Shown here: piece by piece, positions 8,845-63,423 of the stretch
Position numbering within the stretch: position 1 is the first letter of the stretch
Layout: the number at the start of each line of letters is the position of its first letter
Virus record (IMG/VR): IMGVR_UViG_3300035703_000008
Span: 1-64,000 of that record
Strand: one strand, 5' to 3'
Length of the DNA stretch: 64,000 bases
Notes under the pieces: generated by a model
Seen by the model: only the letters and a program-made list of their open reading frames with translations
What the model was told of the DNA's origin: nothing
Databases searched by the model: none
Program-made: the position numbers and the translations under genes

Positions 8845-10122
8845 ATGAACTATAAAGTAGCAGATATCTCACTGGCCGCTTGGGGCCATCGCGAAATCGC
8901 CATTGCCGAGCACGAAATGCCGGGTCTCATGGCCATCCAGAGCAAGTACCAAGGTCAGCTGCCTTTAAAGGGCGCTCGAATCGTGGGCAGCCTGCACATG
9001 ACCATCCAGACAGCGGTACTGATCAAAGTTCTAGTGGCGCTCGGTGCCGAAGTGCGCTGGAGTTCCTGCAACATCTTCTCTACGCAGGACCATGCTGCTG
9101 CAGCCATTGCTGACCTTGGCATCCCTGTGTTTGCTTGGAAAGGCGAAACCGAAGAAGAATACTGGTGGTGCATCGATCAGACCATCGAGGGCTGGCAGCC
9201 CAACATGATCCTCGACGACGGTCACGATCTCACCGATCGTATCATCACCCGGTATCCTGATCTCGTGCCTGGCATCCTGGGAGTCAGCGAAGAAACCACC
9301 ACAGGTATCCTGCGTCTCAGAGAAAAGGCCGCTGCTGGTCAACTACCATTTCCAGCCTTCAACGTCAACGACTCAGTGACCAAGTCAAAGTTTGACAACC
9401 TCTACGGCTGCCGTGAAAGTCTCGTGGATGGCATCAAGCGTGCCACCGATGTCATGATCGCCGGCAAAGTGGCCGTGGTCTGCGGATTTGGTGATGTGGG
9501 CAAAGGATCCGCTGCTGCCTTGCGCACGCTCAGTGCCCAGGTCTGGGTCACTGAAAGCGATCCCATCTGCGCCCTGCAGGCCGCCATGGAAGGCTATCGT
9601 GTTGTGACCATGGACTGGGCCGCTGACAAGGCCGACATCTTTGTCACAGCCACCGGCAACATCAATGTGATCACACGTGCCCACATGGATGTGATGAAGC
9701 ACAACGCCATCGTATGCAACATCGGCCACTTCGACAACGAAATTGATGTGGCTGCCCTCGATGATCTTGCCTGGGAAGAGATCAAGCCCCAAGTGGATCA
9801 CATCTGCTGGCCTGATGGCAAAAGAATCATTCTCTTGGCCCGAGGACGCTTGGTAAACCTGGGCTGCGCTACAGGACATCCTAGTTTCGTGATGTCAAAT
9901 TCGTTTACCAATCAAGTGTTGGCACAGATCGAGCTGTATCAGAATCATAGAGACTACGATTCAGGAGCAGTGTATGTGTTGCCTAAACGACTCGACGAGG
10001 AAGTAGCTCGTTTGCATCTTGCACAGATTGGTGCCCAGCTCACCGAGTTGACTCCGGCACAGGCCGAATACATCAGTGTGCCTGTGGAAGGCCCTTACAA
10101 GCCCGACGCATATAGATACTAA
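8845..10122 (+). CDS. ahcY: S-adenosylhomocysteine hydrolase
   Basis: [56 protein letters not shown]. Confidence 0.97.
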
Positions 10123-10127
10123 GAACT

Positions 10128-10212
10128 TGCCTTAGGACCGTTGACCCTATGGCCAGTGGGCGGCTGCTGCCCCGATCCTGGATTCGCTACCCCGGCATCG
10201 GAAGTGAGCATA
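10128..10212 (+). ncRNA. candidate structured RNA downstream of ahcY
   Basis: GC-rich intergenic segment folding into three hairpins, with a possible pseudoknot. Confidence 0.4.
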
Positions 10213-10222
10213 TATAATCCAT

Positions 10223-10897
10223 ATGAAACTAGAAATATTAGATCTGTTTGAACCCGGCGAGTGGGATTGGTTAAAACAGGACATGCTGGATCGCATCGAC
10301 GCAGAAGGAGTTGATAGACTCTTTGACGAGAGTTTCGCTGATTCAGTGTGGGGGATCAAAGGCCTGTGTCGAGTGGATCGTCGCGTGGTATTGGCCTACA
10401 ATGATCCGGCTTTCATGATGATAAAACAAATACTGGACCGACATTTTCACGGGTCACAGTGGTTTTATATCGCCTATCAGAGACAGTACATTCCCCACGG
10501 GCTCCATGTCGACATCGGCGATCGACACTATGCCAGCAGTGAAGGTTATAGCCTGGTAATCCCCATGCAACAATCTCCGGAATTCAAATTGTTTCTCTGG
10601 GACAAAAAATTTGACAGCATGGATCAGTTGCAAGAATTTCGCAACGAAATAAAAACACATCCCGAAAAATATATTCCGGTCAACAATCTCAGCCAGGATC
10701 ATCAACTTGCTCATTGCAATCTTGATCTTCCCATCACTGACTATATGGAGCTAGCAGGTATCTATGAGTATAAAATCGGTACCATAGCTAAATTTCCCAA
10801 AAATCATGTTCATGCCAGTCACGACTGGCTGGCGTCCAAAAACCACACGCACAAAGATCTTATCATAATACACAGCATGCCACCTTCCCATGACTAA
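10223..10897 (+). CDS. putative 2OG-Fe(II) oxygenase-like protein
   Basis: YIAYQRQYIPHGLHVD plus HVH; paralogue of 5780..6466. Confidence 0.55.
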   Translation: MKLEILDLFEPGEWDWLKQDMLDRIDAEGVDRLFDESFADSVWGIKGLCRVDRRVVLAYNDPAFMMIKQILDRHFHGSQWFYIAYQRQYIPHGLHVDIGDRHYASSEGYSLVIPMQQSPEFKLFLWDKKFDSMDQLQEFRNEIKTHPEKYIPVNNLSQDHQLAHCNLDLPITDYMELAGIYEYKIGTIAKFPKNHVHASHDWLASKNHTHKDLIIIHSMPPSHD

Positions 10898-12257
10898 TAT
10901 ACACATACCCGTAGAAACTATCCAGCAATGGAAAGCCAGAGTGCTAGATGTCAAAAGCCCCACATTTTGCGGAGCCAAATGGTATCATGCTTCTATGTGG
11001 CTCAACGCTGGAGTGACCACCAGCTGCCACCACAACCCTCCGCATGCCATCGATCGGGAAGCCATTAAAACCAATCCCAGTGCCTTGCACAATACCCCGA
11101 TCAAAAAGCAAGAAAGAGGTATGCTGCAGCGTGGAGAAAAACCCAAGAATTGCCAATTTTGCTGGGTCATGGAAGACCTTGATTCCAACAATGTCAGTGA
11201 TCGGGTATGGCAAAGCACTGTGAGTTCCGAGGAAAGCCTACAATTTGCCTACGAGCAAAGCAACGAAATCGATGTAGCTCCGCATTACCTAGAAGTCAGT
11301 TTCGACCCTACATGCCAGCTGGCCTGCTCATATTGTTGCCCTAGCATATCCAGCAGCTGGGCCAGAGATGTCAAGCAAAACGGTCCCTACCAAAATCTGC
11401 CAACAGATCATCGCAATCACTATATCTATGACGGCAGCGACGCCAGACTGTTTGGCATACAAGAAGTGAATCCCTATGCCGAAGCCTGGTTCCGCTGGTG
11501 GGACACCGAACTACACAAGAGCCTACGGCAGTTAAGGATCACCGGCGGCGAGCCCATGATGAGTCCGCACACTTGGCGTCTTTTAGATTGGCTGGCCAAG
11601 AATCCCAATGAAAGCGAGACACGTATCGAGATGACCACCAATCTCACCTACAACGATGAGATACTGGATCGTTTCCTGGACCATGCCAGTAAAATCAAAC
11701 AACCTATCTGGATCTATACTTCAGGCGAAAGTGTGGGTGCTCGTGCCGAGTACGTGAGAGATGGTCATTCCTGGGAACAATGGCTGAAAAATGTCGAACA
11801 TGTACGCACCAGTGGAGTGATCGAAAATGTCAGTATCTGTGGCACCATGAGCGCGATCAGCAATGATGGGTTCGTGGAGTTCTTGCATTTTCTCTTGGAT
11901 CAGAAACGCCAGTACGGTGCCAACTGGATGTTGATGAGTGTGAACTTGGTTCGATTCCCCACGTTCCAAAACATAGTGGTACTGCCCATGGAACTCAGGA
12001 TGGAGTATGCCCGGGAAATCGAAGACTTCATGGCCATACCCGACGTAGAAACTTTGTTTGTGCCATTTGAAAAAGATCACATCAATCGTTACATACGATA
12101 TCTACGCGGTGTGATCAAACCCCACGACGACGCCGACACCAACATTGATGCGTTGCGTCGCGACTTCCGCAGTTTCTTTGATCAGTATGACCAACGCAGG
12201 AACAAGGACTTTTGTGCCACGTTCCCGCGCTTGGCCGATTGGTATCGCAGTCTCTAG
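10890..12257 (+). CDS. radical SAM protein with N-terminal Twitch/SPASM-like Cys cluster
   Basis: CQLACSYC, TGGEP; N-terminal C...CHH...CQFC. Confidence 0.9.
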   Translation: MTNIHIPVETIQQWKARVLDVKSPTFCGAKWYHASMWLNAGVTTSCHHNPPHAIDREAIKTNPSALHNTPIKKQERGMLQRGEKPKNCQFCWVMEDLDSNNVSDRVWQSTVSSEESLQFAYEQSNEIDVAPHYLEVSFDPTCQLACSYCCPSISSSWARDVKQNGPYQNLPTDHRNHYIYDGSDARLFGIQEVNPYAEAWFRWWDTELHKSLRQLRITGGEPMMSPHTWRLLDWLAKNPNESETRIEMTTNLTYNDEILDRFLDHASKIKQPIWIYTSGESVGARAEYVRDGHSWEQWLKNVEHVRTSGVIENVSICGTMSAISNDGFVEFLHFLLDQKRQYGANWMLMSVNLVRFPTFQNIVVLPMELRMEYAREIEDFMAIPDVETLFVPFEKDHINRYIRYLRGVIKPHDDADTNIDALRRDFRSFFDQYDQRRNKDFCATFPRLADWYRSL

Positions 12258-12958
12258 TTTGTGACTGGCTTGCTGGTGGCCACATAAGGCGCCGTGGGCG
12301 CCTGATACCTCTCCAATGGCACAGCATTTACTGTGAGACCCAGGAGACTGCTATAGCGTATCTCATCGGTGTCGTTGACACCACCGTGCCAGGAATTGTT
12401 GGTGTTGGCATGCCACCATCCGTCACCGTAGGCAGTAGTGATGCGTGTGGGATTATTTCTTTCTAGATCATCCCAGAAAAAACTGCTGAGTCGAGGATCA
12501 TCGTGCTCGCTCCAGTAAACAAGCCCGGTAGCTACCAAAAGGCGATAATCAGTGTGTATATCGTTGACGAACCCAGGTAGGTCTTTGGTGAGTTCACCGT
12601 GTATGGCGCAGTGTTTGAACATGCTGTCTGGCTGCCATCCCCACCAAGACGGGAATTCAGGCAAGCGATCGTACATGGCATCGATGAGCTTGCGCTTGAG
12701 TTCATCCGAGCAGAAATATCTCTGCAGTTCCCAGAGTTTGCGATTTTCCTGGCGTGGCCACAGTACCTTGAACCGCTTGCCAGGCCAGTGATTGATGTTG
12801 ACCTCGCTGGTGGCTCCAAAAGGTTGCCAGTTCTCGCACTCGAACTCTTCTAGTAGCTCATTGCGAGTATAAGGGATATCGATTTTGAGACGAAACAAAT
12901 GACGCTTTTCTTCTACTGCATCCATGCGGATATTAAAACCCGGGAATGATTTTTCCAT
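12254..12958 (-). CDS. 2OG-Fe(II) oxygenase-like protein
   Basis: IHTD...SWHG......R facial triad pattern; start uncertain. Confidence 0.6.
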   Translation of the reverse strand: MEKSFPGFNIRMDAVEEKRHLFRLKIDIPYTRNELLEEFECENWQPFGATSEVNINHWPGKRFKVLWPRQENRKLWELQRYFCSDELKRKLIDAMYDRLPEFPSWWGWQPDSMFKHCAIHGELTKDLPGFVNDIHTDYRLLVATGLVYWSEHDDPRLSSFFWDDLERNNPTRITTAYGDGWWHANTNNSWHGGVNDTDEIRYSSLLGLTVNAVPLERYQAPTAPYVATSKPVTN

Positions 12959-12971
12959 ATATAAAGTTCCA

Positions 12972-14183
12972 ATGAATAAAAATTCTAAACTGTACTGCGT
13001 ATGGGCCGATTCGGGCCTGGCCTTGCACAACAGCGGGCGCACTCTCTTGTGTTGTCACAGTCGTAAATATCTACAGGACGAGAGCGGCAACGATATTTAC
13101 CTACACACCCACTCCCTGGAGCAAAGTCTCGACAGTCCCACACGGCAGGAAATACAGGCGGCCCTGGAACAAGGCGAGCAGCATTGGAACTGCCAGGCCT
13201 GCTGGGACGAGGAATCTGCCGGCAGAGACAGTCGCAGGGTAGTATCCAACCGCATGAATCAACACATAGATACCAGTGGTCGTAATCCCAAGCTCTTGGA
13301 TCTCAAGCTGGGCAACACCTGCAACCTGGCCTGCCGTCATTGCTGGCCCGAAGTTTCCAGCAAGTGGGTCCGAGATTTCTACGAGATCGCTGTGCGGAAG
13401 ACCGGGCAGAGCTATCCTGAATACCTTGCACGCTGGGACTCGATACAAAAGAGCTATGATCGAGACAACGAACCCTTGTGGACACAGTTGCGAGAATACG
13501 TGGATGGCGCCGAGTACATTGATGTGTATGGTGCTGAACCCATGCTGCTGCATCGGCTCTGGGAGATACTGGACTACAGTGTACAATCGGGACACAGTCA
13601 GCATCAAAGCATACATGTCAACACCAACGGAACCATCTGGAATCCCCGATACATCGAGACACTGGGTAAATTCCGTCATGCGCAGATCGATCTCAGCATC
13701 GACGGTGTAGATCAGCACTTCGACTACATACGTTACGGAGAGCCTTGGTCAGTGATGGCCGAGAATCTCGATCGTTACAAGGCCTGGAGTGATCCTCTGC
13801 CCAACGTCAATATCTGTGTGTGTATCACTGTGTTCGCCCTCAATGTCTGGTATCTGCCTGAGCTTTATCGATTTTTCCGAGAACGAAAAATCAGCGTGTT
13901 CTTCAACTTCTTGCACATGCCCCAGTACCTCAATCTCAAGACCTTCCCTGATCCCATCAAACAGGCCATCATAGAAAAACTCGACAGCGTGACCATCGAC
14001 TCGAGGTGGGAGCAAGAGATCCCAGCCGTAAAAAACTTCTTATTGGCCCGAGATCATGACCCCCAGCAACAATGGAAAGATTTCTGCCGTAACACCGATC
14101 ACCTTGACCAACTAAGATCTCAGTCGTTCAGTGACACATTCCCGGAGTTTTGGTCAGTGGTCAAGCCCCATTGGCAAGCCTGA
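12972..14183 (+). CDS. radical SAM protein (Twitch/SPASM-like)
   Basis: CNLACRHC, YGAEP, NTNGT, LSIDG; N-terminal C..CC..CQAC. Confidence 0.9.
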   Translation: MNKNSKLYCVWADSGLALHNSGRTLLCCHSRKYLQDESGNDIYLHTHSLEQSLDSPTRQEIQAALEQGEQHWNCQACWDEESAGRDSRRVVSNRMNQHIDTSGRNPKLLDLKLGNTCNLACRHCWPEVSSKWVRDFYEIAVRKTGQSYPEYLARWDSIQKSYDRDNEPLWTQLREYVDGAEYIDVYGAEPMLLHRLWEILDYSVQSGHSQHQSIHVNTNGTIWNPRYIETLGKFRHAQIDLSIDGVDQHFDYIRYGEPWSVMAENLDRYKAWSDPLPNVNICVCITVFALNVWYLPELYRFFRERKISVFFNFLHMPQYLNLKTFPDPIKQAIIEKLDSVTIDSRWEQEIPAVKNFLLARDHDPQQQWKDFCRNTDHLDQLRSQSFSDTFPEFWSVVKPHWQA

Positions 14184-23738: not shown

Positions 23739-24247
23739 ATCGCCCAGGGCACGAGCAGATAGCATTTTTCTGGGGCAACGAAGTCGAGCACACTCCCATG
23801 CTGGGACGACCCACCTTGTTTGTGGTAGGCTTGCGCAGCGTGTCAGACATCGAGCGAGAATTGGAAAAACGACCCGATGTCGAGCACATCTTTTTTGGAG
23901 CCAACGACAGTTATCTCCCCAGTGACTGGAAAGATCACCAGGCCTGGGAAAGCATGATCGCTACATTCCTGGATCGTGGCCATTGGTGCAGTCTGGATAT
24001 TCCATTCCGGTATGTGGAAGAGTTTCATGAAGGTGGTCTATGTGAACACCATCGTTTCATTCCCATCATCAAAGTTCCGATCCCTTACTCGGGACTCTGG
24101 AACTACAATACCTGTGTCAAGATCGACGATCGAGACTTCGCTGCCACCAATCCCGGTGTGTGGGTACATCAACTCCATGCGCTCATGAGTCGTGATCGAT
24201 TCACCGATTGGAGCCAATATAGCAAGGATGCCCCAGTCAATGACTGA
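23735..24247 (+). CDS. hypothetical protein in the deazaguanine neighbourhood
   Basis: GNEVEHTP..G.PTLFV and DF.ATNPGVW; core-like codon usage. Confidence 0.65.
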   Translation: MNRPGHEQIAFFWGNEVEHTPMLGRPTLFVVGLRSVSDIERELEKRPDVEHIFFGANDSYLPSDWKDHQAWESMIATFLDRGHWCSLDIPFRYVEEFHEGGLCEHHRFIPIIKVPIPYSGLWNYNTCVKIDDRDFAATNPGVWVHQLHALMSRDRFTDWSQYSKDAPVND

Positions 24248-25424
24248 CGATCGGTACTGGAACCAATCTTCTTTTTGCCCAGTGGCCTGGCGTGGGATCT
24301 ATGTAGATCCTGAAGGAAAAGTTGACAACTGTTGTATTTCATCCAATCGGTTGGGCAATCTTCATGATTCACCTATTGGGGAGATAGTGCAAGGTCGACG
24401 GTTCTTGGAAATAAGACAATCCATGATCGACGGCAACATCCCTCAGGGCTGTCAGGTATGCTACAATGGAGAATCTACAAATCTTCGGAGAGCATTTTTA
24501 GACAAGTTTTCCAAATACGATCGAGACATCTACGACGATGTTCGCGGATTTCGTCTTAATTATCTAGACCTAAGATGGAGTAATACCTGTAATTCTGCCT
24601 GTGTTTATTGTGGTCCAAAATTGAGTTCGAAGATCGCAGCCGAACAAGGAATAGAAATACGAAAAGACTCTGCAAACATAGATCGAACCAAGCAGTTTGT
24701 TGCTGATAACATCCACGACGTCAAGGATATCTATCTAGCCGGCGGAGAGCCTTTGCTGATAAAAGAAAACGAATGGTTATTGTCCTTGTTGCTAGAAAAA
24801 GGAATAGCACCGAGGATCCTGGTCAATACCAATCTCAGCCAAATTGACAACCGTGTCTTTGATCTACTCTGCCAATTCAACAATGTGCATTGGTTGATCA
24901 GTGGCGAGCATGTGGGAGAACACTATGAATACATCAGATATGGTAGTTCCTGGTCGCAGTTTGAAAAAAACGTTGATCATCTCTTAGAAAAGACAGTCCC
25001 GCTTGGTCATAGGTACGAATTTAATTTGGTATATTTTTTATTGAATTTGCAAGGGTTTTGGCAATACCTTGACTGGCTTAAGAGTAAAAAGATACCCGAT
25101 ATGGTGGTGCATCCGGCTTGGATCAGCAATGGTGTCATTGATCCACTGGATCCAAGGCGGGTACCCGAATCGTATCAACATCTCATACTAGAAAACATAC
25201 AGAAAAGATTGGAAAATGGAGATCATTGGGATAGGCAATTAGCACAACATCTGCTAAACTGTTGGCAAGAGACACAACGATACCCTAACCCCATATGGAG
25301 TTGTCGGACCAAATTGGCTTCGCTGGACAAGTCTAGAAATCTCAACAGCAAAAAATTATGGCCCGAAATCTGGGCCATGTTTGACCAACTAGCAAAAGAA
25401 TGGAAAGAAAATGAATCAAGATGA
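24240..25424 (+). CDS. radical SAM protein (Twitch/SPASM-like)
   Basis: CNSACVYC, AGGEP, NTN; N-terminal C..CC..CQVC. Confidence 0.9.
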   Translation: MTDDRYWNQSSFCPVAWRGIYVDPEGKVDNCCISSNRLGNLHDSPIGEIVQGRRFLEIRQSMIDGNIPQGCQVCYNGESTNLRRAFLDKFSKYDRDIYDDVRGFRLNYLDLRWSNTCNSACVYCGPKLSSKIAAEQGIEIRKDSANIDRTKQFVADNIHDVKDIYLAGGEPLLIKENEWLLSLLLEKGIAPRILVNTNLSQIDNRVFDLLCQFNNVHWLISGEHVGEHYEYIRYGSSWSQFEKNVDHLLEKTVPLGHRYEFNLVYFLLNLQGFWQYLDWLKSKKIPDMVVHPAWISNGVIDPLDPRRVPESYQHLILENIQKRLENGDHWDRQLAQHLLNCWQETQRYPNPIWSCRTKLASLDKSRNLNSKKLWPEIWAMFDQLAKEWKENESR

Positions 25425-54416: not shown

Positions 54417-54617
54417 ATGAACCAATGGCTTCAGGCCAACATAGATGCCCTCACTCACTTGGGCATCTATGCTCTCATCGCTTACATGATCTTCGTGATC
54501 GTGATGATATGCCGCGAGAGTGGTGTGCCCAGGTCTGGAGTGATCTGGGTCTTCATCGCCTTGGGCGGAGGATTTACTGGATGGATAGTCAAAGACATCA
54601 TCCAGTGGTTTTTATAG
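54417..54617 (+). CDS. small membrane protein with two hydrophobic segments
   Basis: Two hydrophobic stretches; directly follows ahpC. Confidence 0.55.
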
Positions 54618-54625
54618 GACGAAAA

Positions 54626-55834
54626 ATGAATACCCCGATTTACCTCGACTACTCCGCAACGACCCCTATTGATCCACGGGTTGTGGACGCCATGCTGCCG
54701 TTCCTGCGCCAGGACTTCGGTAATCCAGCCTCGCGCAGCCATGCCTTTGGTTGGCGAGCTGAGGAGGCTGTTGAAGCTGCGCGCCAACAAGTTGCCGATT
54801 TGGTGAACTGCGACGCAAAGGAACTCGTCTGGACCTCTGGCGCTACCGAGTCGATCAACCTCGCACTCAAGGGCGCTGCCCACTTCTACAAAGACAAAGG
54901 CCAACACATCATTTCGGTCAAGACCGAACACAAGGCAACGCTAGACACCTGCCGTGAACTCGAGCGCGAAGGCTATGCGCTCACACTCCTCGATGTGCAA
55001 GAGGATGGCCTCATCGACCTGGCCGCGCTCGAGGCTGCCATGCGTCCCGACACCATCCTGGTCTCGGTCATGCTGGTTAATAACGAGATCGGTGTCATTC
55101 AAGATGTGCAAGCCATTGGTGAGCTCTGTCGGGCGCGCGGCATTATTTTTCACATCGATGCCGCCCAGGCGACCGGCAAGGTTGCGATCGACCTCGCTTC
55201 ACTGAAGTGCGACCTCATGTCTTTTTCGGCTCACAAAACCTATGGCCCCAAAGGGATTGGGGCGCTGTTTGTCCGTCGAAAGCCACGCGTGCGGCTTGAG
55301 CCACTGATTCACGGGGGCGGGCATGAGCGTGGCATGCGCTCTGGAACCCTTCCCACCCATCAAATTGTTGGCATGGGTGAGGCTTTTCGCCTCGCTCAGC
55401 TCGAGATGTCTACCGAGAACGAGCGCATTCGAGCCCTTCGCGATCGGCTGTGGGCAGGTCTCTCAGAAATGGAAGCGGTGTACCTGAATGGAGACCTCGA
55501 CCAGCGAGTGCCGCACAACCTCAATGTCAGCTTCAATTATGTCGAGGGCGAGTCGCTACTCATGGCTGTGAAGGACATCGCTGTCTCATCCGGATCAGCC
55601 TGCACCAGTGCCAGCCTCGAGCCCTCGTATGTCTTGCGTGCCCTTGGCCGCAGCGATGAGCTGGCGCACTCATCCATTCGCTTTTCGGTGGGGCGCTTTA
55701 CCACCACGGAAGAGGTCGACTTCACCATTGCGCTCATGAAAGACCGGGTGGCCAAATTGCGCGAGATGTCTCCCTTGTGGGAGCTCGTGCACGAGGGAAT
55801 CGACCTCAACACCATTCAATGGGCAGCACACTAA
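54626..55834 (+). CDS. iscS: cysteine desulfurase
   Basis: [33 protein letters not shown] end. Confidence 0.97.
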
Positions 55835-59077: not shown

Positions 59078-59662
59078 ATGGAACTCATAAAAGTAAATCA
59101 AGACTTGATCGCCAAGTTTCCTTATCCTGGAGATGTGTATGATCTCTATGATTCTATCCGATCCAAGCTGGATGTGTTGTTTTCTCGTGGAAATCATTGG
59201 ATACGCATGGATGACGGGGTTTCTACCTACAAAGATCAAGAATTCCCCGAGCAAGGCACTGGACTGCATCACTGGCCTGAGTTGCGACCTTTCCTAGACT
59301 GTGTCTGGCCCAGTGTGAAAGAGTATGCCAGACTGGTGGACCTTGATCCTGAAAGATGTGAGATCCGTACCATGTGGGCCAACATATATCATCCCGGCGG
59401 TCGTGTCAATCGCCATCGGCATTTTTACACCGACAAACTGCCCACTTTCTCGTTGATATGCTATCTAGTAAGACCGCCTGAGTCAGGGAATCTGTTTGTC
59501 TCAGTGCCCGGGGAGGACGATGTCGTGGTCAAAGAGATCGACTATGCCGAGGGCGACATCGTGATTTTCCCCAGTCGCAGGCTGCACTGGAGCGGGCCAA
59601 ATCTCAGCGACCAAGATCGTGTGTTGATCGCATTTGACTGGTATCAGACACCGAGCGGTTGA
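59078..59662 (+). CDS. 2OG-Fe(II) oxygenase
   Basis: WAN...HRH, GD.VIFPS..LH....N....R..IAF. Confidence 0.8.
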   Translation: MELIKVNQDLIAKFPYPGDVYDLYDSIRSKLDVLFSRGNHWIRMDDGVSTYKDQEFPEQGTGLHHWPELRPFLDCVWPSVKEYARLVDLDPERCEIRTMWANIYHPGGRVNRHRHFYTDKLPTFSLICYLVRPPESGNLFVSVPGEDDVVVKEIDYAEGDIVIFPSRRLHWSGPNLSDQDRVLIAFDWYQTPSG

Positions 59663-59718
59663 CCATTAAATAGCACGATGCTATACTAGTGGAACAGTAA
59701 GCAACACGCTCTTTAACA
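59659..59718 (+). promoter_or_regulatory. sigma70 promoter followed by rrn-type boxA
   Basis: TTGACC-17-TATACT (59659-59687); GCTCTTTAACA at 59708-59718. Confidence 0.8.
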
Positions 59719-59749
59719 ACTAGGAAAAGTATGTGGCCCAGAAGTTGGG

Positions 59750-60106
59750 CACCATATTGAAGCACATTACTCTCAGAGCACAGAGCATCCGCGGAGAGGA
59801 CCGATCACGTTCGGCTGCACGGTCGCCGACTCAGTAGTGTGTTTCAATATGGTGACACCATATCCAAACGCATTGAGATTCGGAGTGATCAACCGCGGCA
59901 ATGCAGACAACAGGAGATGAGCGGCCTGCCAGTGCGTTTGGATATGGTATCAAAAGGTCACAGCAGATGCAGGTATCGTGCGTGGACGCATGCACTATTC
60001 GGGCCCTCCCAGCCGGGGACGGGTCCTGAGACAACTGCGGGCTCGGCTACGGACCCTTTAGCGAGGGATTCCCAAATCGCCCCGATCTCTGCTGTGACCT
60101 TTTGGT
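59750..60106 (+). ncRNA. tandem array of three long-stem RNA elements
   Basis: 19-22 bp stems in which every mismatch is G-U; units 1 and 2 are homologous and covary. Confidence 0.7.
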
Positions 60107-60129
60107 ATCATACTAGCCTCAAGATTTTT

Positions 60130-60212
60130 GGATGACGGGCGGCATTGGCGACCGCAGCGGACTGTAAATCCGTGCCTTCGGGAACGGGGTTCGAATCCCT
60201 GGTCATCCACCA
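60130..60212 (+). tRNA. tRNA-Tyr (GTA)
   Basis: Cloverleaf, long variable arm, CCA. Confidence 0.88.
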
Positions 60213-60326
60213 AGATGCACAGCGTCGCTCTACGCTGTGGCAGGACGGCCTCTCGATGCTAGCCACGAAGCCTCTCAAACTGCGACTAGAGCTCTACTTG
60301 CAAGGTTGAGCATAGCACCATTTCAT

Positions 60327-60401
60327 GCACCGTTCGTCTATCGGTTAGGACACATCCCTTTCACGGATGGAAGAGGAGTTCGATTCTCCTACGGTGTACC
60401 A
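60327..60401 (+). tRNA. tRNA-Glu (TTC)
   Basis: Cloverleaf, CCA. Confidence 0.92.
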
Positions 60402-60443: not shown

Positions 60444-60887
60444 ATGGCATTAGGAACTTGTAAAACCTGTAGTAAAGAGTTTAGATTCTTCGGAAGTCAA
60501 TCATCGGGTCAATTCTGTTCGAGAGAATGCACCCACGATTACAGAACTAAACTGATTATGGAAAGCGGTAAAGGTAATAAGACCAATGCTGCAACATATT
60601 TGCGAAGATTTGTAAAATACGAATGTTCTTATTGTGGAATCAGTAATTGGCAAGGAAAGCCAATCTCACTGCAAATCGATCACATAGACGGAAACAATAA
60701 AAATAATACAATCGAAAACATAAGATGGTTATGCCCAAATTGTCATAGTCAAACTCCAACTTGGGGATTTAAAAATGCTAGTGAATCCTCGAAACAGGCA
60801 AGCCAACAAGGAGCAAAAAAAGGCAACCAAAAAAATCATCTAAACAATAAATCTTGTCTATCGATAGCAGATTTAGAAAGGTTGTAA
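60444..60887 (+). CDS. HNH homing endonuclease
   Basis: CSYC, LQIDHIDGN..NN..EN.RWLCPNCH; AT-rich. Confidence 0.9.
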   Translation: MALGTCKTCSKEFRFFGSQSSGQFCSRECTHDYRTKLIMESGKGNKTNAATYLRRFVKYECSYCGISNWQGKPISLQIDHIDGNNKNNTIENIRWLCPNCHSQTPTWGFKNASESSKQASQQGAKKGNQKNHLNNKSCLSIADLERL

Positions 60888-60914
60888 GGGGTTCGATTCC
60901 CCTACGGTGTACCA
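60856..60914 (+). pseudogene. remnant second copy of tRNA-Glu (T arm, acceptor 3' strand, CCA)
   Basis: AGGGGTTCGATTCCCCTACGGTGTACCA versus AGGAGTTCGATTCTCCTACGGTGTACCA; GTCTATCG D-arm fragment. Confidence 0.8.
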
Positions 60915-60938
60915 TATATACAGAGCAAGGAGAAAGCC

Positions 60939-61558: not shown

Positions 61559-62164
61559 ATGCCAGCAGTATTTCTAGTCAGCGACACGCATTTTGGTCAT
61601 GCCGGCGTGTGTCGCTTCACAAGATCGGATGGTGTGACCAAACTGCGTCCCTGGGACGACGCCGCGGAGATGGATGAAGCCATGATCCGGGCCTGGAACG
61701 AGCGTGTGCGGCCTAACGACAAAGTCTATCACCTAGGCGATGTTGTGATCAATCGCAAATCATTGACGACATTGGCTCGTCTGAATGGCGACAAAGTGCT
61801 CATCCGTGGCAATCACGACATCTTCAAAGATGAGGATTACGCTCCTTACTTCAGGAGCATCCGTGCTTACCATGTCATGAACGGCATGATCCTTAGCCAT
61901 ATCCCTGTTCACGAAGCCAGCCTGGGTCGATTTGGTGTCAACATCCACGGACACTTGCATGCCAACCGAGTGACGCGAGCTAGGGGTGTCAATGCCCGGT
62001 CTGGAGAAATCCAGTACACCGACGAGATTGACCCCAGATACCATTGCGTGTGCGTGGAACAGACTCCGGACTTTGCTCCCATCCTTTTCGAAGACGTGAT
62101 CAAGAGGATCGAAGCCGAAGGCGGTCAAATAGGGTTCCGCAACGGCAATGGTCCGGTGATGTAG
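61559..62164 (+). CDS. calcineurin-like metallophosphoesterase
   Basis: SDTHFGH, HLGD, GNHD, SH.P, HGHLH; AAGGAGG RBS. Confidence 0.9.
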   Translation: MPAVFLVSDTHFGHAGVCRFTRSDGVTKLRPWDDAAEMDEAMIRAWNERVRPNDKVYHLGDVVINRKSLTTLARLNGDKVLIRGNHDIFKDEDYAPYFRSIRAYHVMNGMILSHIPVHEASLGRFGVNIHGHLHANRVTRARGVNARSGEIQYTDEIDPRYHCVCVEQTPDFAPILFEDVIKRIEAEGGQIGFRNGNGPVM

Positions 62165-63293: not shown

Positions 63294-63322
63294 TTGACAT
63301 CTAAAACCCGATATTGTATACT
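63294..63322 (+). promoter_or_regulatory. sigma70 promoter
   Basis: TTGACA-17-TATACT. Confidence 0.85.
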
Positions 63323-63332
63323 AACAACAACT

Positions 63333-63423
63333 GGAGACGTGACCGAGAGGCCGAAGGTGCTCCCCTGCTAAGGGAGTATGCGCCAAAAGCGCATCGTGGG
63401 TTCGAATCCCACCGTCTCCGCCA
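63333..63423 (+). tRNA. tRNA-Ser (GCT)
   Basis: Cloverleaf, long variable arm, CCA. Confidence 0.93.

What the first reader, a model, noticed from the sequence alone, without database searches (positions are those of the whole stretch)
59750..60112. Tandem array of long covarying RNA stems each enclosing different cargo (candidate small-RNA cassette system)
Seen: three abutting units, 59750-59771/59833-59854 (22 bp), 59857-59875/59930-59948 (19 bp) and 59949-59967/60088-60106 (19 bp). Every deviation from perfect complementarity is a G-U pair on the + strand, indicating selection on RNA. Units 1 and 2 have homologous arms (CACCATATTGAAGCACATT versus CACCATATCCAAACGCATT) with compensatory changes in the partner arms, but unrelated 54-61 nt interiors. 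Unit 3 encloses ~120 nt of GC-rich, further-structured sequence. They are the first items transcribed after boxA, ahead of the tRNAs. Known: RNase III cuts ~20-bp stems flanking rRNAs. Inference: a conserved processing scaffold releasing variable small RNAs (antisense guides, decoys or anti-defence RNAs). I do not recognise it as a named family.
Basis: partly seen in the sequence, partly recalled or inferred. Interest (0 to 1): 0.85.

Follow-up and report, generated by a model that had tools for sequence, protein, structure and literature searches.

The report
Shared stem framing phage small RNAs
Three adjacent hairpins at the start of a phage tRNA operon belong to a large, apparently undescribed family found only in viral contigs. 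In it, one conserved 20-base-pair RNA stem encloses over a hundred different small RNAs, most likely as a processing and protection scaffold.

Summary
Three abutting stems of 22, 19 and 19-25 bp lie at 59750-60112. They are the only stems of this size in the 64-kb window.

They are not a local oddity. The unit 1/2 arm sequence (ACCAUAUUGAAGCACAUU / AGUGUGUUUCAAUAUGGU) occurs in more than 120 IMG/VR viral contigs. Those that could be typed are T4-superfamily phages. It is always in tRNA arrays and on the tRNA strand in 122 of 123 cases. It often starts at the ACCA end of the preceding tRNA and ends at the first bases of the next.

It encloses about 130 unrelated interior types, from a 4-6-nt loop to about 140 nt. 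I found it in no cellular genome, no cultured phage and no Rfam family.

Each window unit is its own conserved small RNA family. The arms covary, and the interiors of units 1 and 2 are nearly invariant.

A sigma-70-type promoter and a boxA lie just upstream.

Best reading: an RNA-level closing and processing helix, probably cut by RNase III, that frames small RNAs inside rrn-like phage tRNA operons. Cleavage and cargo function are unproven.

The parts
59659..59687 (+). sigma-70-type promoter-like site, TTGACC-17 nt-TATACT with TG before the -10
   Evidence: 10 of 12 consensus positions. The same TTGACC-N17-TATAMT plus boxA module sits ahead of related arrays in L016, L017/L059/L078, L061 and L073.
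59708..59719 (+). boxA-like antitermination box, GCTCTTTAACAA
   Evidence: Read. The exact 12-mer recurs downstream of the shared promoter in 10 loci. The identification as boxA rests on my knowledge of the E. coli rrn boxA consensus.
59736..59750 (+). short leader hairpin (GCCCA-GAAGU-UGGGC) ending just before the ACCA of unit 1
   Evidence: Read. Conserved in L073 and L016. It fits the general rule that the ACCA is preceded by the 3' strand of a helix.
59750..59854 (+). unit 1: closing stem 59750-59771/59833-59854 (22 bp) around a 61-nt interior (59772-59832)
   Evidence: Model R1 scores 58.9 bits on + against 43.3 on -. The interior family is found in L133-L136, L073 and L109, with a conserved core and covarying arms. 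An identical copy sits in different flanks in run X24.
59856..59949 (+). unit 2: closing stem 59857-59875/59930-59948 (19 bp) around a 54-nt interior (59876-59929)
   Evidence: R1 scores 48.4 bits on + against 40.4 on -. The interior family is in L016, L065, L109 and L031. L031 carries the consensus arms instead. A near-identical copy is in run X15.
59943..60112 (+). unit 3: closing stem 59943-59967/60088-60112 (25 bp, core 59949-59967/60088-60106) around a 120-nt G+C-rich structured interior
   Evidence: The interior family is in L073, L010, L005, L074 and L071, with 30 of 44 predicted pairs showing compensatory change and conserved motifs GGUAUCGU, a GACG loop, ACUA and GUCCUGA.AUAAC. The arms are unrelated in sequence to units 1 and 2 except for the AUCA/UGGU base, and R1 does not detect them.
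60130..60212 (+). tRNA-Tyr(GUA), the first tRNA of the operon, 17 nt after unit 3

Best explanation
The three units are three different small non-coding RNA genes. Each belongs to an interior family conserved in other uncultivated phages, and all share one kind of closing helix: a 19-25-bp RNA stem whose base reads A(C/U)CA...UGGU. This helix is a module of the tRNA operons of T4-superfamily environmental phages, some of them jumbo-sized, and I found it only in viral contigs.

Shown:
- It sits only in tRNA arrays, on the tRNA sense strand, at roughly three per locus.
- Its wobble pairs are G-U on that strand.
- Its arms covary.
- It begins at the ACCA 3' end of the preceding tRNA, or of another RNA that ends helix-ACCA, and can end at the first nucleotides of the next tRNA.
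- It encloses anything from a 4-6-nt loop to about 140 nt of unrelated, often structured RNA.

Inferred:
- The whole array is transcribed from a strong promoter with boxA antitermination, like an rrn operon.
- The two-turn helix is then cut on both strands by the host's RNase III. This would separate neighbouring RNAs, leave tRNAs with short tails for RNase P and 3' exonucleases, and release the enclosed RNA capped and protected by the remaining half-stem.

The functions of the enclosed RNAs are unknown.
For: 123 of 135 matches have a partner arm 6-160 nt downstream. 122 of 123 copies within 1.5 kb of a tRNA are on the tRNA strand. In 58 copies the first bases are the C-ACCA end of an upstream tRNA, and about 18 copies end 4 nt into the next tRNA. 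In 64% of the other upstream contexts the 4 nt before ACCA are predicted to be paired as a 3' strand, against 10% at control positions.

RNA-level selection: a strand-neutral inverted-repeat scan gave 247 G-U against 45 A-C non-Watson-Crick positions in the tRNA sense. In 40 aligned elements 97.2% of cells are paired, 14 of 20 pairs show compensatory change, and no shuffle out of 500 reached the observed values. Model R1 scores the + strand 8-16 bits above the - strand.

Stem length: lengths peak at 18-20 bp and range up to 27. About two helical turns is what bacterial RNase III needs; that requirement is established knowledge, not tested here.

What the stems enclose: only 8 of 382 stems enclose a tRNA.

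rrn-like operon: the promoter plus boxA module is shared by several related arrays.

Conserved interiors.

Viral contigs only: 10 chance-level hits without a partner arm in 185,579 species genomes, none in 50,697 cultured-phage records, and no R1 hit in the T4 tRNA region or the E. coli rrn operon.

A contig from an RNA-seq run (X23) spans upstream RNA, a unit-1-like element and a tRNA. This is weak support because DNA carry-over cannot be excluded.
Against: There is no evidence of cleavage or of mature termini. Only assembled contigs, not reads, were available.

The arm sequence is far more conserved than RNase III is known to require. For example, the U-G wobble at stem position 17 (counted from the A of ACCA) is kept in 38 of 40 aligned elements. 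This hints at a sequence-specific partner or at homogenisation by recombination.

Where tRNAs abut the element, the ACCA/UGG base pairs compete with the tRNAs' own acceptor stems.

The ends could be made by RNase P plus a cut after CCA, without any RNase III.

Cargo-less 44-nt copies show that releasing a cargo is not the only role.

The window's unit stems overlap by 2-10 nt, so their bases cannot all form at once.
Confidence: 0.6

Rival explanations
1. The stems are not cut. They are permanent closing helices that hold the 5' and 3' ends of each small RNA together, as in 6S, 4.5S or Y RNAs, and that insulate folding between neighbours. The ends are made by the tRNA machinery: RNase P at the start of the next tRNA, and an endonuclease plus exonuclease trimming after the upstream CCA.
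For: The element's borders coincide with tRNA borders: ACCA at the 5' base and the first tRNA nucleotides at the 3' base. Upstream non-tRNA RNAs also end helix-ACCA. Removing both neighbours would leave a blunt hairpin of about 15 bp. The sequence after CCA (AU/AUU) resembles the RNase E preference as I recall it.
Against: In the window the three units abut with no tRNA between them, so RNase P and CCA trimming alone cannot separate them. A fully paired stem is a poor RNase E substrate. The consistent stem length of about 20 bp is not explained.
Confidence: 0.25
2. A DNA-level element. The arms are terminal inverted repeats or recombination sites of a mobile or homing cassette (MITE-like, attC-like or moved by homing endonucleases) that shuffles RNA genes between phage tRNA arrays.
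For: Presence/absence polymorphism: L085 has tRNA-Tyr, an 83-nt element, then tRNA-Asp, while L058 has the same two tRNAs 6 nt apart. The same stem at the same site carries a 6-nt loop in L072 and L100 but 29- and 62-nt interiors in L103. The same interior occurs with different arms and in different flanks. HNH and GIY-YIG endonuclease genes are common in these arrays and one lies 330 nt downstream in the window.
Against: 122 of 123 copies are co-oriented with tRNAs. The G-U to A-C asymmetry is 5.5 to 1. No target-site duplication is seen at the filled/empty pair. Private arm variants keep pairing by compensatory change. No transposase or integrase appears among the ten most widespread neighbouring protein families. 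There is no GTTRRRY-type attC core in the arms (read).
Confidence: 0.1
3. The conserved double-stranded stem itself is the active part. It would be a sequence-specific decoy or ligand for a host or phage protein, for example a dsRNA-binding defence factor or a dedicated nuclease or chaperone. The interiors would be secondary.
For: The arms are almost identical across more than 100 contigs whose neighbouring tRNAs and interiors differ. The U-G wobble is kept in 38 of 40 elements. Cargo-less copies exist. The element was found only in viral contigs.
Against: Many functional-looking copies, including unit 3 and the variants, have quite different arm sequences but keep the structure. The interiors are themselves conserved and structured. 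No candidate partner protein was found: the most frequent neighbour, an RNase H-like PF04308 protein seen in 20 loci, has no homologue in this window.
Confidence: 0.1

Closest known systems
RNase III processing stems flanking 16S and 23S rRNA in bacterial rrn operons
   Same: Long (about 20 bp or more) helices made from sequence on both sides of a stable RNA. They lie inside a long precursor transcribed from a strong promoter with a boxA element, together with tRNAs.
   Different: Here the stems enclose 4-140-nt small RNAs, not rRNAs. One stem sequence is reused hundreds of times with over 100 different interiors. The base of the stem is the ACCA/UGG of neighbouring tRNAs. Cleavage is not shown.
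Phage T4 species 1 and species 2 RNAs (rnaC, rnaD)
   Same: Small stable RNAs of unknown function encoded inside the tRNA cluster of a T4-type phage, next to a homing endonuclease gene. In T4, rnaD is followed immediately by A, giving a CACCA 3' end.
   Different: There is no ACCAUAUUG-type closing stem, model R1 does not match the T4 tRNA region, and no similarity was seen to the window interiors.
tRNA-miRNA encoding RNAs (TMERs) of murine gammaherpesvirus 68
   Same: A viral tRNA-like gene followed at once by stem-loops of about 20 bp that are released by tRNA 3' processing. This comparison is from memory and is an analogy only.
   Different: TMERs belong to a eukaryotic virus, use RNase Z and Dicer, and yield miRNAs. 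There is no sequence relation.
Spacer-derived small RNAs of E. coli tRNA operons (for example 3'ETS-leuZ)
   Same: Functional small RNAs that come from transcribed spacers of polycistronic tRNA precursors. This comparison is from memory.
   Different: Those are single, unstructured or terminator-bearing spacers. They have no shared long closing stem and no family of interiors.
Miniature inverted-repeat elements and integron attC sites
   Same: Conserved inverted repeats around a variable middle, many copies, and presence/absence between relatives.
   Different: The phage elements are strand-fixed relative to tRNAs, have G-U asymmetry, no target duplication, no attC core, and no transposase or integrase among the ten most widespread neighbouring families.
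Bacterial Y RNAs (YrlA)
   Same: A long closing stem formed by the two ends plus, in some family members, a T-arm-like module. Both have been reported near tRNAs in phages.
   Different: There is no Rfam YrlA match in the window. The only hit is a sub-threshold 24.6 bits (gathering score 69) elsewhere in L040. No Ro/Rsr gene was seen among the ORFs examined.

Membership tests
RNase III processing stems of stable-RNA operons | uninterrupted double-stranded RNA of about two helical turns formed by sequence flanking a stable RNA | tested here: met
   The window stems are 22, 19 and 25 bp. Across the family, lengths peak at 18-20 bp and reach 27. The interiors are conserved RNAs.
RNase III processing stems of stable-RNA operons | part of a polycistronic precursor with promoter and boxA antitermination signal | tested here: met
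   Met at sequence level only. Promoter-like site at 59659-59687, GCTCTTTAACAA at 59708-59719, and the same module in related loci. Transcription itself is not shown.
RNase III processing stems of stable-RNA operons | staggered cleavage of both strands by RNase III | not testable with these tools
   Only assembled contigs of public runs could be laid, so there are no read ends.
Any Rfam 15 family | covariance-model match at or near the gathering score | tested here: not met
   (window, E up to 10) returned only tRNA. One search (six related loci) found nothing on the elements.
T4 species 1/2 RNAs (rnaC, rnaD) | sequence or structure similarity to the T4 RNAs | tested here: not met
   T4 region fetched and folded. 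R1 gives no hit there.
MITE / terminal-inverted-repeat transposon | target-site duplication flanking the inverted repeats | tested here: not met
   In the filled (L085) versus empty (L058) site, ACCA-AATTTA-GGTTCC is replaced by ACCA-TATTGAAG...CTTCAATAT-GGTTCC, with no direct repeat. This rests on a single pair.
MITE / terminal-inverted-repeat transposon | insertion in either orientation | tested here: not met
   122 of 123 copies lie on the tRNA strand. G-U to A-C counts are 247 to 45.
Integron attC site | R''/R' core sites (RYYYAAC / GTTRRRY) and an integron integrase nearby | tested here: not met
   The arm consensus is ACCATATTGAAGCACATT / AGTGTGTTTCAATATGGT and has no such core. None of the ten most widespread neighbouring protein families is an integrase.
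Y RNA / YrlA | match to the YrlA model and an associated Ro/Rsr protein | tested here: not met
   No match in the window. A 24.6-bit sub-threshold hit in L040 lies outside the elements. No TROVE-domain protein was found among 10 large window ORFs; the remaining ORFs were not scanned.
CRISPR array | direct repeats of constant length separated by spacers of near-constant length | tested here: not met
   The repeats are inverted, not direct, and the interiors range from 4 to about 140 nt.

The most novel reading that the evidence does not exclude
A phage RNA cassette system. A portable, sequence-conserved 20-bp docking helix, read by a dedicated host or phage factor, would let T4-superfamily phages plug more than a hundred different small RNAs (decoys, tRNA-like mimics, anti-defence RNAs) into rrn-like tRNA operons. 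Interiors would be gained, lost and exchanged at the stems between co-infecting phages.
Probability: 0.2. Interest if true: 0.9.

Novelty: new variant of a known kind. Interest (0 to 1): 0.7.

Why it matters
Phage tRNA arrays are usually annotated as tRNAs plus empty spacers. These data show that in a large group of uncultivated T4-superfamily phages the spacers are filled with structured RNAs. Hundreds of copies share one closing helix around over a hundred different conserved interiors, and further RNAs ending in ACCA sit between them. None is in Rfam, and none was found in cultured phages or cellular genomes.

This gives a simple handle, one 19-nt motif or model R1, for harvesting a large set of unknown phage small RNAs. 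It also raises a testable question: how is a viral polycistronic RNA operon punctuated and matured? If the stem proves to be read by a specific factor, it would also be a compact natural scaffold for expressing and stabilising arbitrary small RNAs in bacteria.

Tried and rejected
- Rfam at gathering and permissive thresholds, on the window and six related loci: only tRNAs.
- Cultured phages (INPHARED): only tRNA or chance coding hits for the region, for unit 1, for a 48-nt minimal element and for unit 3.
- Cellular genomes: 10 arm matches, about what chance predicts. None has a partner arm or tRNAs.
- T4 rnaC and rnaD: no relation.
- Sarcin-ricin loop: I noticed that the unit 1 interior shares GAGAGGACCG with the 23S sarcin-ricin loop. 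A local alignment against the E. coli rrn operon scored within the range of shuffles (23 against a mean of 20 and a maximum of 27). Rejected as chance.
- Hammerhead: I read the recurring CCGAACAG...CCGAUGAG interiors as a possible type II hammerhead. There is too little sequence for stems I and III and the core does not fit. Rejected by inspection.
- Orthogonal arms: adjacent elements might use mutually incompatible arms to avoid mispairing. They do not. Adjacent pairs are slightly more cross-compatible than random pairs (15.3 against 14.7 of 16).
- Outside-in pairing, with arms enclosing tRNAs as rRNA stems do: only 8 of 382 stems enclose a tRNA, and all private arm variants pair around non-tRNA interiors.
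- Antisense targets of the three interiors within the 64-kb window: longest matches are 10-13 nt, the same as shuffles.
- Partner protein: the most frequent neighbouring families are an RNase H-like PF04308 protein (20 loci), HNH (19), a metallophosphoesterase (18), and T4 RNase H, UvsX and dCMP deaminase. PF04308 has no homologue in the window. Ten large window ORFs gave no RNA-processing or Ro-like protein.
- Public runs: only assembler contigs were available. They show where units 1 and 2 occur but give no RNA ends.
- Three full-text literature searches found no description.

Full report
**1. The observation.**
The region was read and every claimed pair was checked by script.
- Unit 1 (59750-59771 with 59833-59854) has 22 pairs: 20 Watson-Crick and two G-U.
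- Unit 2 (59857-59875 with 59930-59948) has 19 pairs, one of them U-G.
- Unit 3 (59949-59967 with 60088-60106) has 19 pairs, one of them U-G. It extends outward to 25 pairs (59943-59967 with 60088-60112).

The repeat finder returns the same three inverted repeats and the direct homology of the unit 1 and unit 2 arms. The + strand folds into exactly these three hairpins at -170.6 kcal/mol (z = -7.2). The - strand is weaker at -157.2 (z = -4.7). A scan of the whole window for G-U-tolerant stems of 16 bp or more found only these three.

**2. Surroundings.**
Upstream lie a 2OG-Fe(II) oxygenase-like ORF, a promoter-like site TTGACC-17-TATACT at 59659-59687, GCTCTTTAACAA at 59708-59719, and a small hairpin that ends just before the ACCA of unit 1. 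Downstream come tRNA-Tyr, tRNA-Glu, an HNH endonuclease gene and eight more tRNAs.

The window is part of a 208.9-kb IMG/VR contig from a subsurface metagenome. Its family-B DNA polymerase is 50% and 46% identical to those of Sinorhizobium phage Phosso and Agrobacterium phage Atu_ph07, followed by Rak2-like jumbo phages.

**3. The key result: a large family found only in viral contigs.**
- In 123 of 135 matches a partner arm (consensus AGTGTGTTTCAATATGGTG) lies 6 to about 160 nt downstream.
- 122 of 123 copies within 1.5 kb of a tRNA lie on the same strand as the tRNA.
- In 58 copies the first bases of the arm, C-ACCA, are the last acceptor base, the discriminator and the CCA of an upstream tRNA.
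- In about 18 copies the last four bases of the 3' arm are the first four of the next tRNA, and about 14 more end within 8 nt of one.
- Where no tRNA precedes, the four bases before ACCA are still predicted to be the 3' strand of a helix in 64% of contexts, against 10% at control positions. The upstream sequences fall into recurring conserved non-tRNA RNAs.

Neighbouring genes in these loci include T4 RNase H, UvsX, dCMP deaminase, and HNH and GIY-YIG endonucleases, so the carriers are T4-superfamily phages.

Controls were negative. The narrower pattern gave 10 hits in one genome for each of 185,579 bacterial and archaeal species, about what chance predicts, and none has a partner arm or tRNAs. 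Cultured phages in INPHARED have no copy.

**4. RNA-level selection.**
A strand-neutral inverted-repeat finder, oriented afterwards by the nearest tRNA, gave 211 distinct stems. In these, non-Watson-Crick positions are G-U in the tRNA sense 247 times and A-C 45 times; A-C would be G-U on the other strand.

An alignment of 40 elements (A3) has 97.2% of cells paired. 14 of 20 pairs show compensatory changes, and every measure lies above all 500 shuffles and all slid registers. Two caveats apply: the elements were chosen for having stems, and they are related.

One wobble (U at stem position 17, counted from the A of ACCA, paired with G) is kept in 38 of 40 elements.

Many diverged arm classes keep the ACCAU...AUGGU base and change the rest in a compensated way. 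Model R1, built from A3, finds units 1 and 2 in the window with 8-16 bits more on the + strand, and nothing else in the window. It gives 505 hits at E <= 0.001 in 886 kb of related loci, counting both strands. It finds nothing in the T4 tRNA region, the E. coli rrn operon or the chance genome hits.

**5. What is enclosed.**
Stems almost never enclose tRNAs (8 of 382). Interiors range from a 4-6-nt loop (44-nt elements in L045, L072, L100 and L108) to about 140 nt. 235 clean elements carry 176 distinct interiors in about 130 sequence clusters, and some have T-arm-like GGTTCGAATCC motifs.

The three window interiors are each members of a conserved family.
- Unit 1's interior recurs in L133-L136, L073 and L109. 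Its roughly 45-nt core is identical in the five aligned copies (window, L133-L136); L073 and L109 carry a variant with an inserted hairpin. The arms differ, with 10 compensated pairs among the five sequences.
- Unit 2's interior recurs nearly unchanged in L016, L065, L109 and L031. In L031 it has consensus-type arms.
- Unit 3's interior is a structured RNA family found in L073, L010, L005, L074 and L071. 30 of 44 predicted pairs are compensated, and it has several invariant single-stranded motifs.

Contigs of public runs hold unit 1 (100% identical) and unit 2 in other flanks.

**6. Turnover.**
At the same site between the same neighbours, L072 and L100 have a bare hairpin where L103 has 29-nt and 62-nt interiors. 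L085 has an 83-nt element between tRNA-Tyr and tRNA-Asp where L058 has only AATTTA, with no target duplication. Elements and interiors are therefore gained and lost on short evolutionary scales.

**7. Mechanism.**
Shown: this is a strand-specific, pairing-constrained RNA helix in tRNA operons found only in viral contigs. It is bounded by tRNA-type ends and frames conserved small RNAs.

Inferred: the operon is transcribed as one precursor from the promoter, with boxA antitermination as in rrn operons. The helix of about two turns is then cut by host RNase III. This would free the neighbours for RNase P and exonucleases and release the enclosed RNA with a protective half-stem.

I rate the RNA-level scaffold reading at about 0.85 and the RNase III step at about 0.4, for 0.6 overall. 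The main rival within the RNA reading is an uncut permanent closing helix, with ends made by RNase P and trimming after CCA.

A DNA-level mobile or recombination element is disfavoured by the fixed orientation, the G-U asymmetry, the lack of target duplication and the compensatory arm evolution. However, the presence/absence data and the abundance of homing endonucleases leave room for recombination at the arms as the way modules spread. The near-identity of the arm sequence across very different contigs is not explained by RNase III and may point to a specific partner. None was found.

**8. Comparison with known systems and novelty.**
The element works most like the processing stems of rrn operons. 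It sits where T4 keeps its unexplained species 1 and 2 RNAs, but it is related to neither in sequence or model score. It matches no Rfam family, and three literature searches found no description. I class it as a new variant of a known kind: a reusable closing and processing stem with many interiors in phage tRNA operons.

**9. Verdict.**
Interest is 0.7. The find is real, widespread and apparently undescribed, and it exposes a large hidden set of phage small RNAs. Processing and function remain to be shown.

Noticed in passing
window 60444-60915: An HNH endonuclease ORF (60444-60887; PHROG HNH families) sits directly after tRNA-Glu (60327-60401). It is followed at 60889-60915 by a second copy of the tRNA-Glu T-arm, acceptor 3' strand and ACCA (GGGGTTCGATTCCCCTACGGTGTACCA). 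This looks like a homing or insertion event that carried a replacement tRNA 3' end.
   Followed up: partly
window 61559-62161: A calcineurin-like metallophosphoesterase gene is embedded in the tRNA array between tRNA-Cys and tRNA-Arg. The same family (73% identical to the L005 copy) lies in 18 of the related loci. It could be an RNA-end healing or repair enzyme.
   Followed up: partly
window 60213-60326: The 113-nt spacer between tRNA-Tyr and tRNA-Glu is absent from a relative: a contig in run X15 joins 60212 to 60326 with TACAC between. It ends in GCACCA (60315-60320) but shows no fold signal (z = 0.43).
   Followed up: partly
related loci, e.g. L041 (rc) about 11800-11925, L029, L046, L061, L007: Several conserved non-tRNA RNAs lie between hairpin elements and end helix-ACCA. 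One example is a roughly 125-nt RNA, GAATTGATGGGTGG...GACGGGAAAGACCGT. Others end GGAATTCCCC, AGCAACACTGG, CAGGAGAGTGA or CCATCACCACC; the last looks like an odd tRNA-Tyr-like RNA. None is in Rfam where tested.
   Followed up: partly
L049:771-913, L007:216-363, L023 (rc 46-198): One interior family of 105-115 nt (AAAAUCCC..AACU..GCAACC..GGGUAAG..GGGAUA plus a terminal hairpin) appears to have several covarying helices. It looks like a complex structured RNA of unknown class.
   Followed up: no
L023:7406-7593 (- strand): A sub-threshold match to the group I intron model (32.9 bits, gathering score 50, E = 1e-4) lies inside a related tRNA array.
   Followed up: no
window 59788-59797: The unit 1 interior contains GAGAGGACCG, identical to 10 nt of the 23S sarcin-ricin loop. 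Alignment to the E. coli rrn operon is not above shuffles, so this is treated as chance.
   Followed up: yes
window 8845-14183, 24192-25424, 54425-55834: The window carries unusual auxiliary genes for a phage: S-adenosylhomocysteine hydrolase, three radical SAM proteins (one with a SPASM domain) and an IscS-like cysteine desulfurase.
   Followed up: no
window 63294-63322: A second near-consensus promoter-like site (TTGACA-17-TATACT, 11 of 12) lies just before tRNA-Ser (63333-63423). In several related loci a TTGACA box follows directly on the 3' arm of an element. The arrays may therefore be split into several transcription units.
   Followed up: no
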